A stretch of DNA of 64,000 nucleotides, from positions 411,122,001 to 411,186,000 of the forward strand of contig NW_027362764.1 of assembly GCF_046119375.1 (NCBI RefSeq), written 5' to 3'. A program made the translations under genes and the position numbers. The number at the start of each line of letters is the position of its first letter. Position 1 is the stretch's first letter. This stretch comes from Phyllobates terribilis (Eukaryota). The notes beneath the pieces are model-generated. The model had not been told where the DNA came from. It saw only the letters and a list, made by a program, of their open reading frames with translations, and searched no databases. Shown piece after piece: positions 3,974-9,399 of this stretch.

Positions 3974-4973
3974 TGAGGTAGATCGGCTCACTCGGCTGAT
4001 GCAGTAGGGCGAATAATTGGGAGCGAGGGGGTTTATCACCTTAATACGCCCAGAGGTGAACCCGTTGTGCTCTGACTGACATAGTCACTCCAGCGCATGC
4101 CAAAATTTCAGTTTTTAATTTGGAATACTCCTGTGTATCCTGTAATGCCAGATCATAATAAGTCTTTTGGAGCTCACCAGTTAAATAGGGTGCCAGCACC
4201 TCTGTCCACAGCTCTGGTGGCAGCTCAACCCGCTCTGCTACCCATTCAAAAACAGTCAAAATGCCTCCACATCATCCCCTGGGGTCATCTTTTGCATGGC
4301 TTGTCTTAACACTTTCCAGACATATGAGTCATCACTTGGACTTGGGGGAGGGGCTGCTGGCCTCCCACAAACTGCCTCTGTGAGCAATTTCATCTGCTGC
4401 TGCTATTGTCTGTGATGTTCTTGTTGCCGCTGCTGCTGTTGTGGATCTGTTGCATAAGCAGCTTACTTGTTTCCTGCTGGGCTAGATGCTTAGTCAGGTC
4501 CTCCATGGTGTTGGTCGTCGTTTCCTGGCTGTCACTTTAAATTTCTTATTGGTTTATTACATGACATCATCAAAATAAACATGGCTTTTCTGGCATAACG
4601 GCAAAGCAAAAGAAAGTGTACAACACAGTCCATACGTCTGGGCGAATTCGGCCACTCATGGTTAGCAAAAACACACTGTTCAGGTTAGCACAAACACATG
4701 CTCATCTCTCTCTGCAGCTAGCCTCTCCAGATACACTGAGCACTGAATGACTCAGCAGGCTGTCTATTTAAACCACAGACCACATCCTGGGTGGAGATAT
4801 GGAGAACAACCTCCCACAGGCTCTATGGTTGTTCTAAAAAACACAGCCCTTAAATGGCTGCTTAACCCCTCTCAATACTTAGTGTGCTGGAGCAAAACGT
4901 CTGAGTCAATGAAGTTAATAGCCTCAGTGAAACATACCTCCCCTCCAGCACTTTGCCAGTGACTTTTTTCACA
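3974..4973 (-). mobile_element. Internally deleted Gypsy-type LTR retrotransposon with SCAN-like gag remnant
   Basis: TG...CA ends; 4-bp TSD ACGG/ATGG; it interrupts one arm of the outer inverted repeat; minus-strand peptides MEDLTKHLAQQ and FEWVAERVELPPELWTEVLAPYLTGELQKTYYDL...KLKTEIL resemble SCAN-related gag. Confidence 0.65.
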
Positions 4974-5647
4974 ATGGTTAATATGCCCATAAATAAATCT
5001 AACAATATATAGGATCAAAACATATCCCCATGAGATTAATGAACATAGATAGGGAAAGAAAAAATCTAGAGGGGTGAGGAAGTGTATTCACCCTCACTTG
5101 CCCTACATTCCCACAAAGATTGGCACCCTAAGTTTGATATGGCGCCCCCGCTCAATGCAGACTATCCCTAAATTACCCTAAAAAGAACTAACTATCCAAA
5201 AACCACCACCATCACTAAACAATAAAGTGCTATAGTGCAGATTTGTAGGATATGTCTGGTCATATGACCCTAAGGTAGTACAAGGTCATAAACTGTAGGA
5301 ATGTGCAGAAAAATAGGATGGTCCCTATTTGAGTGAACCCTCCAAAGATATGGCAGTTTATTTGATAACTCAAATTATTGATTACAAGGCTGTAGCATAA
5401 AATACCAATAAAGCCTAATAAATCTTTGTAGCAAATATGGACACATATAATGTAGTAGCATGTACTTAATTATGATATAATTATCTTTAGAGGTATTCAC
5501 AGGCCCATACCTATGCGCTTCAAGAGATGAGGTGCAGAGTTCATCAGGGGACCTTGTGTACAGTGTCCATTTTAGAACATGATCAGATATCAAAATCAAA
5601 CATCAGAATGATGTCAGTTTGAAGATAAATACCCTGTCTGAGAACTG

Positions 5648-6066
5648 ATTTTGATAAGTGATTCTGACAAGCGATTCTGACAAGTGATTTTGATGAGTGA
5701 TTCTGACAAGTGATTTTGATGAGTGATTCTGACAAGTGATTTTTATAAGTGATTCTGACAAGTGATTTTGATGAGTGATTCTGACAAGTGATTCTGACAA
5801 GAGATTTTGATGAGTGATTCTGACAAGTGATTCTGACGAGTGATTTTGATGAGTGATTCTGACAAGTGATTTTGATGAGTGATTCTGACAAGTGATTCTG
5901 ACAAGTGATTTTGACGAGTTTTTTTTGACGAGTGATTTTGACGAGTGATTTTGACGAGTGATTTTGATTAGTGATTCAGACGAGCGATTCAGAAGAGCGA
6001 TTCTGACGAGCGATTCTGACGAGCGACTCCGACGAGCGATTCTGACGAGCGACTCTGACGAGTGAC
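5648..6066. repeat. 13-bp tandem array in left arm of foldback element
   Basis: Units GTGATTCTGACAA / GTGATTTTGATGA, grading into GCGATTCTGACGA. Confidence 0.9.
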
Positions 6067-6105
6067 TTTTACAACTGTAATAATAATAATAAAAAAAAAG
6101 TAACT

Positions 6106-6177
6106 GTTCGCTGATGGGACTTGAACCCCAAATTCTGTGTCCCAAAGCCAGTGCACTAACCACTGGTCTACAAACTC
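6106..6177 (-). ncRNA. tRNA-like Pol III cassette X (not a functional tRNA)
   Basis: Minus strand reads GTAGACCAGTGGTTAG (box A-like)...GGTTCAAGTCC (box B-like) and then an oligo-T run (A-run 6091-6099); the acceptor stem does not pair. Confidence 0.6.
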
Positions 6178-6422
6178 AGCTGTAAAAGCCTAGGAATTCT
6201 ATTTGGTTATATGATTCTCAGTGCAAACTTGCCTAAAACTCATCGGGACTTATGCACAGACTGCAAGCAAGCCAAATTCAAATGATGTTTGATTTTGATG
6301 TGTGAGTCTGATGTGTGACTTTCTTCAAACATCAGAATCAGAATCACAATGACTTTTAGTCACCCTGAGTATTTTCATGGTTGATCTCATAAGACAAGAA
6401 AGGCTGTCAGTTAGTATCACTT

Positions 6423-6486
6423 GACTGGATAGCGCAATGCTAAGGCATCATCCTCTTAAACTATTGTGTTACAAATACTGATAGGA
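6423..6486 (+). ncRNA. tRNA-like cassette Y, box B deleted
   Basis: GGATAGCGCAATGCTAAGGCATCA...; mirror of 6906-6975 but lacking the AGAGTT segment of box B; followed by a T-run at ~6498-6503. Confidence 0.4.
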
Positions 6487-6905
6487 ATAAAAAATTGTTT
6501 TTTAATTATGACTCTTTAGCACACAAACTACAGGGGTGTTTTACTTTTAATATCTGACACTCTGATTGTCATCCTGATGTGCTAAGAGTTTCAGACACGC
6601 TGTCTATTTGCATGGCCAAAGTAAATTGGGAGGCAATAACTTACTACATATCTATTTCCAAGAGACTTTACATTTGCATAATTTCTTAAAGGGGTCTAAT
6701 GATAAAATGTTTTTATTTCCATCCACCCAAGTACTGGCTGCAAACTCCCAATTTACTTTTGCTATGTAATTTACCATGCAACTAGATAGCGTGTCTGAAA
6801 CTCTTAACACATCAGGATGACAATCAGAGAGTCAGATGTTAAAAGTAAAACACCCCTGTAGTTTGTGTGCTTAATAGCCATAATAATAAAAAAAAAAAAT
6901 CTTAT

Positions 6906-6975
6906 TCCTATCAGGATTTGAACTCTTAACACTATAGTTTCAGAGGCTGATGCCTTAGCATTAAGCTATCCAGTC
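6906..6975 (-). ncRNA. tRNA-like Pol III cassette Y' (degenerate)
   Basis: Minus strand GGATAGCTTAATGCTAAGGCATCAGCCTCTGAAAC...GAGTTCAAATCC with a D-arm-like stem, a CT-CTG-AA loop and box B, followed by a long T-run. Confidence 0.55.
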
Positions 6976-7210
6976 AAGTGATAAACACTGATAGCTTTTC
7001 TTGTTTTATGAGATAAACCATGAAAATACTCAGGGTGACTAAAAGTCATTGTGATTCTGATGTTTGAAGAAAGTCACACATCAGACTCACACATTAAAAT
7101 CAAACATCATTTGAATTTGGCTTGCTTGCAGTCTGTGCATAAGTCCCAATGAGGTTTTGACAAGTTTGCACTGAAATATAACCAAATAGAACTCCTAGGT
7201 TTTCATAACT

Positions 7211-7282
7211 GAGTGTATAGCTTAGTGGTTAGTGCACTGGCTTTAGGACACAGAATTTTGGGATCAAGTCCCATCAGCGAAC
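7211..7282 (+). ncRNA. tRNA-like Pol III cassette X' (not a functional tRNA)
   Basis: TAGCTTAGTGG box A, GGATCAAGTCC imperfect box B, 11 T at 7289-7299. Confidence 0.55.
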
Positions 7283-7321
7283 AATTACTTTTTTTTTTTA
7301 TTATTATTACAGTTGTAAAAG

Positions 7322-7634
7322 TCTCTTGTCAAAGTCACTTGTCAGAATCACGTGTCAGAATCACTCATCAAAATCACTTATCAAAATCACTTGTCAAAAT
7401 CACCTGTCAGAATCACTTGTCAGAATCATTTGTCAAAATCACTTGTCAAAATCACTTGTCAGAATCACTCATCAAAATCACTCATCGAAATCACTTGTCA
7501 AAATCACTCGTCAAAATCACTTGTCAGAATCACTCATCAAAATCACTCGTCAAAATCACTCGTCAAAATCACTTGTCAGAATCACTCATCAAAATCACTC
7601 ATCAAAATCACTTGTCAGAATTACTTATCAAAAT
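7322..7634. repeat. 13-bp tandem array in right arm of foldback element
   Basis: Units TTGTCAGAATCAC / TCATCAAAATCAC, the reverse complement of the left-arm array. Confidence 0.9.
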
Positions 7635-9399
7635 CAGTTCTCAGACAGGGTATTTAGCCTCAAACTGACATCATTCTGATGTTTGATTTTGATATCTGAT
7701 CATGTCCTAAAATGGACACTGTACTTGTGTGCTTGTGTGGGAGTAGTTCCTGCAATGAGAAACCTGTCTTTCTGGCTGCGTGTATGATGGATATCAAAAG
7801 ATCTAAAGATAAGTACATCATCTTATCAATTGTTGATTTTCTGGAATTTGACCAATTTCTGATCCTTATGGATCCTTGCTATGCTAGTATCTGTACTATC
7901 TAGCGAGATGCTGTTCCTTGTGTACACCTATAGTGTATATTGCTGATCATATTTTATTTGTATTTATATTTAGAATTGGCTGGCATATTTCTGCTACTAC
8001 ATTATATGTGTTCATATTTACAACACAGATTTATTAGGCTTTATTGGTATATTATGCTACAGCCTTGTAATTAATAATTTGCGTTATAAAATAAACTGGC
8101 ATTTCATCTGAGGGTTGACTCAAATAGGTAACATTCTATTTTACTGCATATTCCTGCAGTTTATGACCTTGTATACCTTAAGGTCATTTGACCAAACATA
8201 TCCTACAATTTTTCACTTTAGTACTTTATTGTTTGGTGATGGTGGTGGTTTTAGGATAGCCTCCGGTGGTTTTCAGGATAGCCTGCATTGATTTGGGGTG
8301 CCATATCTAACTTAGGGTGCCAACCTCCGCACCAAGATAGAGCAAGTGAGGGTGAATACACTCCCCCCACCCCTCTAGATTGTCTCTTCTCCTATCTACG
8401 ATCTATCGTATGTTTATTAATCTCATGGGAAAATGTTCTTGATCCTATATATTGTTGGATACATATATGGGCATTTTAACCATATAATTAAAAGTTACAT
8501 TTTAGGAGTATTTCTTTTTGGTTATATCCACTATTATACCAGGCAAACTACATCACTGAAGATACAGGATACAGGGCAAAGGAGGACCTGATACTTTCCC
8601 TAAGAAATGCCCTACCTGACCGCGGAGGTTGACACTCTAAATAAAGCAAGCAAGATTTGGCGCCCCCGCTCACTATTGTTTTACCCTAGATGAACATAGG
8701 GAGCCCTAGGCAGAATATCCATAAATAAGGACAAAGTGACAAAGTGAAAAAATAGGTTATATGTAGTGTTGAGCGAGCATGCTCGACACTGCTCGGTACT
8801 CGCCTGAGCATCTCACTACTCGGGATGTTTGGCGAGCACCAAGCATTTCCGGGTTACTTGGGCGGGAGCTCGGGTCTCCGCCCTGCACGTTTGGCGCTCT
8901 TTACAGAGCCAATGAACATGCAGGGATTACCAGCCAGTCACTGTAATGCCACAGCCATGTTGTTTGTGGGCATTACAGTGATTGGCTGGCCGCACAGCGT
9001 CACCTCGAGTATTTAACACCGGGCGCCGCCATCTTGGACACAGTCGCCCGGGATCAGACAGTGTAGGGTCAGTGCTGCTGAGAGATATATAGTGCGAAAT
9101 AGGTAGTGTAGGGTCTCTAAAGCCTGCCAAATCAAACAAACTGTCCTTCTCAGGACTAATATCCATCCCAAATATCAGGCAGGCAGGCAGGCTTTATAGG
9201 AGACGCAGTGGTTATACCAACAAACACTGCATTACAGTCCTGTGTGCTCCTGCTGGTCAGATTGCTAGACTTATCCCCCGGTCTCAGGGGCCAGGAAAAA
9301 TCCTTTTTTTTTTTATCTAAATCCTGTATTTTTTTTTTCCTCAGTCAGAATACGTGTCTTATTAACCTATTGGTATTTCCCCCCCCACAAAAAAAAATG

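What the first reader, a model, noticed from the sequence alone, without database searches (positions are those of the whole stretch)
5561..7721. 2.2-kb Tc1/mariner-type foldback element with ~1-kb mirror arms
Seen: TA TSD, CAGTG termini, arms pairing over ~1.07 kb around a ~110-bp spacer, and a repeated AAAATCAAACATCA motif both near the ends and internally. Known: TA plus CAGTG is the Tc1/mariner signature, and IR/DR elements repeat transposase-binding sites within their TIRs. Inference: a non-autonomous foldback family with compound arms, able to form long dsRNA or cruciform DNA.
Basis: partly seen in the sequence, partly recalled or inferred. Interest (0 to 1): 0.7.

Follow-up and report, generated by a model that had tools for sequence, protein, structure and literature searches.

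The report
High-copy TA-flanked frog foldback transposon
This is one worn copy of a very abundant jumping gene that encodes no protein and is built as a 2.2-kb palindrome; it is real and probably of the Tc1/mariner kind, but it is a fairly ordinary type of element and its family assignment is not proven.

Summary
Window 5561-7721 is a 2,161-bp palindrome. Its arms (5561-6632 and 6745-7721) are 92% complementary around a 112-bp spacer. The ends read CAGTG…CACTG and are flanked by TA, and the 14-nt motif occurs four times against 0.1 expected.

The "motif" is a variant of that unit. Each arm also holds two weak tRNA-like units, each followed by a T-run.

Public contigs of the same species show single-copy flanks (summed depth about 8-12) against 4,000-175,000 inside the element. 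Dozens of contigs leave the right end into unrelated DNA, and a second species holds the family. So it is a mobile, non-coding, high-copy family.

Tc1/mariner membership is plausible but unproven:
- No cognate transposase was found.
- The internal motif copies are inverted, which is not the IR/DR layout.
- The target is a tandem 8-mer, so a 6-bp duplication (CTTGTG) with TACAGTG ends fits equally well.

The copy lies inside an older 3.5-kb palindrome. Nothing shows expression. Earlier notes of this scan describe what appears to be the same family elsewhere in this genome.

The parts
5559..5560 (.). Left flanking TA. It is either the putative 2-bp target duplication or the first two bases of the element under the 6-bp reading.
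5561..5645 (+). Left terminal domain. It starts CAGTG and holds two degenerate 13-bp units, inverted relative to the adjacent array, including the 14-mer motif at 5592-5605.
   Evidence: (D4)
5646..6065 (+). Left 13-bp tandem array of about 32 units. The outer part alternates the TGATTTTGATGAG and TGATTCTGACAAG types. The inner part (5926-6065) is a CpG-bearing GACGAG/GCGATTC type.
6091..6176 (-). Left tRNA-like unit A. The body is 6104-6176 and is followed on the minus strand by T9 (6099-6091). It points outward.
   Evidence: ARAGORN calls it only at the 80% threshold. Box A-like and box B-like strings were read.
6283..6338 (.). Left internal motif region. It holds the 14-mer in inverted orientation (6283-6296), three 13-bp units (6283-6322) and a short local hairpin.
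6395..6503 (+). Left tRNA-like unit B (approximate limits), followed by T6 at 6498-6503. It points inward.
   Evidence: Read. Similarity of its tail to unit A is family D5. There is no tRNA hit in Rfam.
6633..6744 (.). Central spacer, only weakly self-complementary.
   Evidence: Its summed depth is as high as that of the arms.
6888..6995 (-). Right tRNA-like unit B (approximate limits), followed on the minus strand by T12 (6899-6888). It points inward.
   Evidence: D5
7054..7109 (.). Right internal motif region, the mirror of 6283-6338.
7211..7299 (+). Right tRNA-like unit A, followed by T11 (7289-7299). It points outward.
   Evidence: The Rfam tRNA model hits 7218-7274 with 16.3 bits, E = 1.3, below the gathering score of 29. 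With four family-majority letters it reaches the ARAGORN 80% threshold.
7313..7636 (-). Right 13-bp tandem array of about 25 units.
7637..7721 (-). Right terminal domain, ending CACTG.
7722..7723 (.). Right flanking TA.
4974..5460 (.). Context: left arm of an older outer palindrome that encloses the element.
   Evidence: 86% complementary to 7992-8483. Mostly single copy by depth.
7992..8483 (.). Context: right arm of the outer palindrome.

Best explanation
Window 5561-7721 is one aged copy of a high-copy, protein-less foldback DNA transposon of a frog genome. Earlier notes of this scan call the species a poison frog; I did not verify that.

The family founder was a nearly perfect palindrome. 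Each arm runs from a unique 85-bp terminus, through a variable 13-bp tandem array, to a core with two tRNA-derived units. The arms meet at a short spacer.

The element cannot move by itself. It was cut and pasted by a transposase supplied in trans that recognises the shared termini. The flanking TA and the CAGTG ends make a Tc1-like (Tc1/mariner superfamily) enzyme the most likely one. The 13-bp units, whose variants also form the terminal and internal 'motif', are candidate repeated binding sites, as in other internally repetitive foldback elements.

Shown here: the anatomy, the lack of coding capacity, the high copy number with sharp boundaries, the presence in a second species, and the private decay of this copy.

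Inferred: the superfamily, the binding role of the repeats, and any RNA or DNA hairpin formed in vivo.
For: - Anatomy.
- No coding capacity: no Pfam family reaches its curated cut-off. The ORFs of 100-186 aa are array translations. The word-based protein search gave only three weak low-complexity hits.
- Copy number and boundaries: summed contig depth is 7-28 in 5172-5543 and 7776-8271, against 4,082-80,077 (run X5) and 5,074-175,044 (run X6) in the bins between 5544 and 7775. About 7,000-7,500 contigs per run lay on the stretch. 41 contigs of X6 leave at 7724 into letters with 0.37 agreement, which means unrelated flanks. Other copies skip 250-390 nt of the right array, so array length varies between copies. 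Run X17, labelled as another organism, holds pieces, 80 of them at 99% identity or more.
- Private decay: at 17 of 21 sites where the family-majority letter differs from this copy, the majority letter restores arm pairing. The 8% arm mismatch is therefore mostly decay after insertion.
- Tc1/mariner context: TA plus CAGTG is the Tc1-type end signature (established knowledge). Tc1/mariner elements are among the most abundant DNA transposons of poison-frog genomes (PMC6278860, PMC11152451). TA-flanked foldback non-autonomous elements tied to Tc1/mariner are known in C. elegans (PMC3814204).
Against: - Only one copy with both flanks could be read, and a 2-bp TA match is weak evidence.
- The flanks read CTTGTG-TA on the left and TA-CTTGTG-TG-CTTGTGTG on the right. 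An element with TACAGTG…CACTGTA ends and a 6-bp duplication fits equally well.
- The best-supported loose end lies at 7724, one base beyond the TA.
- No transposase with these termini was found. The window has no Tc1 ORF, and its Tc1 relic ends at 696 and 37394 share only TACAGTG with this element.
- The internal motif copies are inverted relative to the terminal ones, unlike IR/DR Tc1 elements.
- I did not see full-length palindromic structure in other copies directly. The Logan contigs are short, so only earlier notes that I did not check say other copies are palindromes.
Confidence: 0.6

Rival explanations
1. It is the same mobile foldback family but belongs to another superfamily. The true ends are TACAGTG…CACTGTA (5559-7723), and insertion duplicated 6 bp, CTTGTG (5553-5558 and 7724-7729).
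For: A perfect 6-bp direct repeat abuts the TA on both sides. The most supported loose end is at 7724, not 7721. No Tc1-type partner was found. The internal repeats are not in the IR/DR layout.
Against: The right flank holds two further tandem CTTGTGTG units. The 6-bp match is therefore also what results from an insertion into the TA of a pre-existing CTTGTGTR array. By established knowledge, superfamilies with a 6-bp duplication are rare in vertebrates, whereas TA plus CAGTG elements are extremely common.
Confidence: 0.22
2. It is two independent or head-to-head copies of a 1-kb non-palindromic repeat (for example a tRNA-derived retroposon with a tandem-repeat tail) that happen to face each other. 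On this reading it is not a unitary foldback element.
For: Each arm holds tRNA-like units with T-runs. The short contigs cannot show that other copies are palindromes.
Against: The two outer ends are identical 31-mers flanked by TA, and the sharp depth boundaries lie exactly there. The spacer is as deep as the arms. Arm mismatches are private to this copy, which indicates a palindromic founder. Earlier notes of this scan, which I did not check, describe other copies with the same mirrored layout.
Confidence: 0.06
3. It is a local inverted duplication or an assembly artefact, not a mobile element.
For: The element lies inside a larger local palindrome, 4974-5460 against 7992-8483.
Against: Depth inside the element is hundreds to thousands of times that of the flanks in two individuals. 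Junction contigs with zero differences reach from both flanks into the element in both individuals (4968-5584, 5116-5586, 7702-8229, 7702-8161). A second species holds the family.
Confidence: 0.02
4. It is a working RNA locus: a domesticated or self-serving element whose tRNA-like units are transcribed by Pol III, or whose read-through hairpin feeds small-RNA pathways.
For: Box A-like and box B-like strings followed by T-runs occur four times. The family-majority letters make unit A more tRNA-like, giving TAGCTCAGTGG and GGTTCAAGTCC. The predicted hairpin is very stable.
Against: The tRNA models score below threshold. This copy has lost the canonical box letters. The only RNA-labelled run is a guess and covers just the repeat, as a low-coverage DNA run would.
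Confidence: 0.1

Closest known systems
Tc7 and the PALTA / CeleTc foldback elements of C. elegans (Tc1/mariner-dependent, TA-flanked; listed in PMC3814204)
   Same: They are non-coding and consist almost entirely of two long inverted arms. They are TA-flanked with Tc1-type ends, and are multi-copy.
   Different: They are smaller (hundreds of bp to about 1.6 kb). As far as I know they lack long short-unit arrays and tRNA-like units. For Tc7 the link to the Tc1 transposase is experimentally established; here no partner is known.
Internally repetitive foldback elements of Drosophila: FB, Galileo (P superfamily; PMC3688188, PMC3573991) and Tetris (PMC4079207)
   Same: They have long terminal inverted repeats built of a unique end followed by tandem repeats of variable number, a short middle, and mostly no coding capacity. 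In Galileo the repeats carry extra transposase-binding sites.
   Different: Those have 7-10-bp target duplications and other ends (P or Mutator type). Their repeat units are 10-220 bp rather than 13 bp. They are insect elements, not vertebrate ones.
IR/DR Tc1 elements (Sleeping Beauty type)
   Same: TA target, CAGT ends, and more than one copy of an end motif per arm.
   Different: IR/DR arms are about 200-250 bp with two direct copies of the binding site, and they flank a transposase gene. Here the internal copy is about 690 bp inside and inverted, and there is no gene.
tRNA-derived SINE heads
   Same: Box A-like and box B-like strings and a T-run after each unit.
   Different: Here they are built into a cut-and-paste palindrome, four per element and in mirrored orientation. 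There is no LINE-type tail and no poly-A.

Membership tests
Tc1/mariner superfamily (non-autonomous member) | TA target-site duplication | tested here: inconclusive
   TA lies on both sides. Only one copy could be read, and a 6-bp CTTGTG duplication with TACAGTG ends fits as well. The loose end of other copies is at 7724.
Tc1/mariner superfamily (non-autonomous member) | Tc1-type termini (5'-CAGTG / CAGTT) | tested here: met
   CAGTG at 5561 and its complement at 7717-7721. That this is the Tc1 signature rests on established knowledge.
Tc1/mariner superfamily (non-autonomous member) | Shares its terminal binding region with an autonomous element that encodes a DD34E/D transposase | tested here: inconclusive
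   The window has no such ORF. Its Tc1 relic ends share only TACAGTG.
IR/DR subgroup of Tc1 elements | Two direct copies of the binding motif within each inverted repeat | tested here: not met
   The internal 14-mers (6283 -, 7096 +) are inverted relative to the terminal ones of the same arm (5592 +, 7677 -).
Foldback-type elements (structural class) | Arms make up nearly the whole element, and there is no coding capacity | tested here: met
   The arms are 1,072 and 977 nt of 2,161. No Pfam domain is above its cut-off and there are no real homologues.
Foldback-type elements (structural class) | Internally repetitive arms with a variable number of units | tested here: met
   There are 32 and 25 units of 13 bp. 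Other copies skip 250-390 nt of the array (joints).
Drosophila FB / Mutator-type foldback elements | 8-10-bp target duplication | tested here: not met
   The flanks share at most 6 bp outside the TA.
MITE | Small size (under about 800 bp) | tested here: not met
   2,161 bp.
tRNA gene or tRNA-derived Pol III unit | Cloverleaf scoring above the thresholds of the tRNA models | tested here: not met
   ARAGORN finds none at default settings and calls unit A only at the 80% threshold. Rfam tRNA scores 16.3 bits against a gathering score of 29.

The most novel reading that the evidence does not exclude
A vertebrate cut-and-paste foldback family that carries four working tRNA-derived Pol III units per copy, two per arm, one facing out and one facing in. 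The units would serve the element, for example by driving hairpin or small-RNA production, by recruiting TFIIIC to shape chromatin, or by helping mobilisation. On this reading the family combines a TA-targeting Tc1-type end with FB-type repetitive arms.
Probability: 0.1. Interest if true: 0.7.

Novelty: new member of a known kind. Interest (0 to 1): 0.35.

Why it matters
The genome appears to have been inflated by transposons, and a palindromic family with on the order of a thousand or more copies contributes to that. Such copies are potential sites of cruciform formation, replication trouble, ectopic recombination and hairpin RNA.

If the family proves to be driven by a Tc1-type transposase, it would be a vertebrate counterpart of the nematode Tc7/PALTA elements, with FB-like repetitive arms. 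If the tRNA-like units prove active, it would link Pol III units to a DNA transposon.

As it stands, this copy is an ordinary decayed insertion with no sign of function.

Tried and rejected
- Other copies in the window: none. A blastn of the element against the window gave no hit outside itself at E 1e-3 or below. A short-word search with the 87-bp end found nothing either.
- Pattern scans with two terminal patterns: blank in metagenome contigs and blank in viral contigs.
- Literature: no held paper contains the terminal 15-mer. The poison-frog genome papers do not mention foldback or non-autonomous families.
- Rfam: nothing above a gathering score. The bantam-like hit at 5587-5662 (E = 0.65) and the snoRNA/miRNA-like hits at the internal motif are chance-level.
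- A nested palindrome inside each arm (unit A side against unit B side): only 68% identity with many gaps, so rejected.
- Expression: the one run labelled RNA is a guess. It covers only the repeat and not the flanks, as a low-coverage DNA run would, so it says nothing.
- Repbase and Dfam could not be consulted, so 'already curated' remains open.
Full report
**1. What is there**

The stretch 5561-7721 (2,161 bp) is a palindrome.

- **Ends.** The same 31-mer, beginning CAGTGTCC, lies at 5561-5591 on the plus strand and at 7691-7721 on the minus strand. The two copies differ at one position (A/G), which the pattern left open. No such match occurs in shuffled sequence.
- **Flanks.** TA precedes the element at 5559-5560 and follows it at 7722-7723.
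- **Arms.** A global alignment of the element with its own reverse complement pairs 5561-6632 with 7721-6745. 1,834 of 1,992 aligned columns are identical (92%). That leaves 6633-6744 as a 112-bp centre with little pairing.

**2.

- **Tandem arrays.** More than a third of the left arm and a third of the right arm is a 13-bp tandem array. The left array is 5646-6065 with 32.2 units, and the right array is 7313-7636 with 24.9 units. The outer units alternate between a TGATTTTGATGAG type and a TGATTCTGACAAG type. The inner part of the left array is a CpG-bearing GACGAG/GCGATTC type that the right arm has mostly lost or never had. This fits the CpG counts of 23 in the left arm and 7 in the right arm. 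The seven extra units explain why the arms differ in length.
- **The motif is a unit variant.** The 14-mer is a variant of the 13-bp unit. Family D4 aligns 5583-5605 with right-arm units at 74-87% identity. Two such units sit at each terminus in the opposite orientation to the adjacent array.
- **Orientation of the internal copies.** The internal copies (6283-6296 minus, 7096-7109 plus) are inverted relative to the terminal copy of the same arm. This is not the IR/DR arrangement of Sleeping Beauty-type Tc1 elements, where the two sites of one arm are direct.
- **tRNA-like units.** Each arm also carries two tRNA-like units, each followed by a T-run.
  - Unit A points outward. On the left it is 6104-6176 on the minus strand, followed by T9. 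On the right it is about 7211-7288 on the plus strand, followed by T11.
  - Unit B points inward. On the left it is about 6395-6497, followed by T6. On the right it is about 6995-6901 on the minus strand, followed by T12.
  - Their tRNA character is weak. ARAGORN finds nothing at default settings and calls unit A only at 80% of its threshold. The Rfam tRNA model gives 16.3 bits against a gathering score of 29.
  - The family-majority letters seen in public contigs turn the right unit A into TAGCTCAGTGG and GGTTCAAGTCC, which are canonical box A and box B strings. The units are therefore tRNA-derived and have decayed in this copy.

**3. Is it mobile and multi-copy?**

The window holds no second copy. 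I laid Logan contigs of four public runs on 4800-8500. The tool warns that summed contig depth is not a copy number, so I use it only for contrast.

- **Depth contrast.** In two DNA runs of the window's species, from different samples, the bins 5172-5543 and 7776-8271 have depth 7-28. Every bin between 5544 and 7775 has 4,082-80,077 (X5) or 5,074-175,044 (X6).
- **Number of contigs.** About 7,000-7,500 contigs per run lay on the stretch, 1,300-1,450 of them at 99% identity or more.
- **Junctions.** Contigs with no differences run from each flank 20-26 nt into the element in both individuals. The insertion is therefore present in both. I saw no empty allele among the joints shown.
- **Other insertion sites.** 41 contigs of X6 follow the right end to 7724 and then continue into letters that agree only 0.37 with each other. 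That means other insertion sites.
- **Array length.** Several contigs skip 250-390 nt of the right array, so array length varies widely among copies.
- **Other species.** A run labelled as another organism (X17) holds pieces of all parts of the element, 80 of them at 99% or more.

Together this shows a mobile family with sharp boundaries at the CAGTG ends and roughly a thousand or more copies, shared by related species.

**4. Age and founder**

Among the best-supported differences, 23 sites inside the element carry a family-majority letter that differs from this copy, and 21 of them have an aligned partner in the other arm. At 17 of those 21 the majority letter restores pairing with the other arm. 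Most of the 8% arm mismatch is therefore private decay. The founder was close to a perfect palindrome, and this copy is old rather than recently inserted.

**5. Coding capacity**

There is none. The ORFs of 100-186 aa are translations of the arrays. No Pfam family reaches its cut-off. The word-based protein search gave three weak low-complexity hits from metagenome sources.

**6. Superfamily**

TA plus CAGTG is the classical Tc1 signature (established knowledge). Tc1/mariner elements are among the most abundant DNA transposons in the poison-frog genomes published so far (PMC6278860, PMC11152451). That the window comes from a poison frog is stated only in earlier notes of this scan; the runs I saw are coded.

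TA-flanked foldback non-autonomous elements tied to Tc1/mariner are known in C. elegans: Tc7 and the PALTA and CeleTc families (PMC3814204).

Three things keep membership open.

- **The duplication is ambiguous.** The left flank ends CTTGTG-TA, and the right flank begins TA-CTTGTG-TG-CTTGTGTG. The target is a tandem CTTGTGTR repeat. An element with TACAGTG…CACTGTA ends and a 6-bp CTTGTG duplication fits the one copy I can read as well as the TA reading does. The best-supported loose end at 7724, one base past the TA, does not help to decide.
- **No partner was found.** The window has no Tc1 transposase. Its Tc1 relic ends at 696 and 37394 share only TACAGTG with this element.
- **The motif layout is not IR/DR**.

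I put Tc1/mariner at about 0.6 and another superfamily at about 0.2.

**7. How it most likely works**

A transposase supplied in trans binds the shared termini and excises and reinserts the whole palindrome. This step is inferred.

The 13-bp units are candidate extra binding sites. This is by analogy with Galileo, whose arm repeats bind its THAP domain (PMC3688188), and with Tetris (PMC4079207). It is an inference.

If a host transcript reads through the element, it would fold into a hairpin. The predicted energy is -1,431 kcal/mol against -486 +/- 16 for shuffles. 891 of 944 pairs are arm-to-arm, and the longest uninterrupted helix is 92 bp.

Nothing shows that this happens. The only run guessed to be RNA covers the repeat but not the flanks, exactly as a low-coverage DNA run would.

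**8. Context**

The element sits inside an older, larger palindrome. 4974-5460 is 86% complementary to 7992-8483. The element lies 100 bp from the inner end of the left arm and 270 bp from that of the right arm.

The inner parts of those outer arms are single copy by depth, and the outer ends are moderately repeated. I read this as a younger foldback element that landed in the loop of an older long-armed element or local inverted duplication. I did not follow it further.

**9. Verdict**

This is a real, abundant, non-autonomous foldback transposon family. In structure it resembles both the TA-flanked nematode foldback elements and the internally repetitive Drosophila ones. Its tRNA-derived units are an unusual extra.

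Earlier notes of this scan (s1-204965, s1-238374, and s1-201007 on this same stretch) describe what appears to be the same family and the same units. I could not compare sequences with them. Whether the family is already in Repbase or Dfam could not be checked.

I file it as a new member of a known kind, with modest interest.

Noticed in passing
window 4974-5460 and 7992-8483: An outer palindrome with arms of about 490 bp, 86% complementary, encloses the foldback element. The element sits off-centre in its roughly 370-bp loop. The inner arms are single copy by contig depth, and the ends (5048-5171, 8272-8395) are moderately repeated. It could be an older long-armed element or a local inverted duplication. 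It also raises the question of whether foldback elements prefer hairpin loops as targets.
   Followed up: partly
window 4800-4966: A different very high-copy repeat (summed depth up to 60,000) ends sharply at 4966, next to the outer palindrome. 82-116 contigs leave there into other sequence. Its identity was not determined.
   Followed up: no
window 5117-5172, 8271-8326 and 8620-8640: A short repeated segment beginning AGRTTGRCACYCTAAG occurs in both outer arms and a third time at 8620. In other genomic copies it is preceded by ...GACCGCGG (loose ends at 5117 in runs X9 and X17), as it is at 8612-8619.
   Followed up: no
window 696 (+) and 37394 (-): Two ends of a classical Tc1-type element (TACAGTGGGT.C.GAAA.TATTCAGACCCC) lie about 36.7 kb apart. 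They are unrelated to the foldback termini beyond TACAGTG.
   Followed up: no
window 25116, 25316, 25516 and 55657: A unit beginning GTACAGTGACAGTG recurs at exact 200-bp spacing three times near 25.1-25.5 kb and once more at 55.7 kb. It looks like a 200-bp tandem repeat with a dispersed copy.
   Followed up: no
window 5926-6065 versus 7313-7400: The inner part of the left 13-bp array is CpG-rich (GACGAG/GCGATTC units), while its mirror in the right arm reads TG/CA. The arm totals are 23 CpG on the left and 7 on the right. This suggests asymmetric CpG decay, or an array expansion limited to one arm.
   Followed up: partly
window 4800-8500 (run X9): In the run guessed to be RNA, A>G and T>C places make up 69 of 133 changes, against 50 of 121 in DNA run X5. 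This is a slight excess in the direction expected for A-to-I editing of a hairpin. It is confounded by copy differences and is not significant.
   Followed up: no
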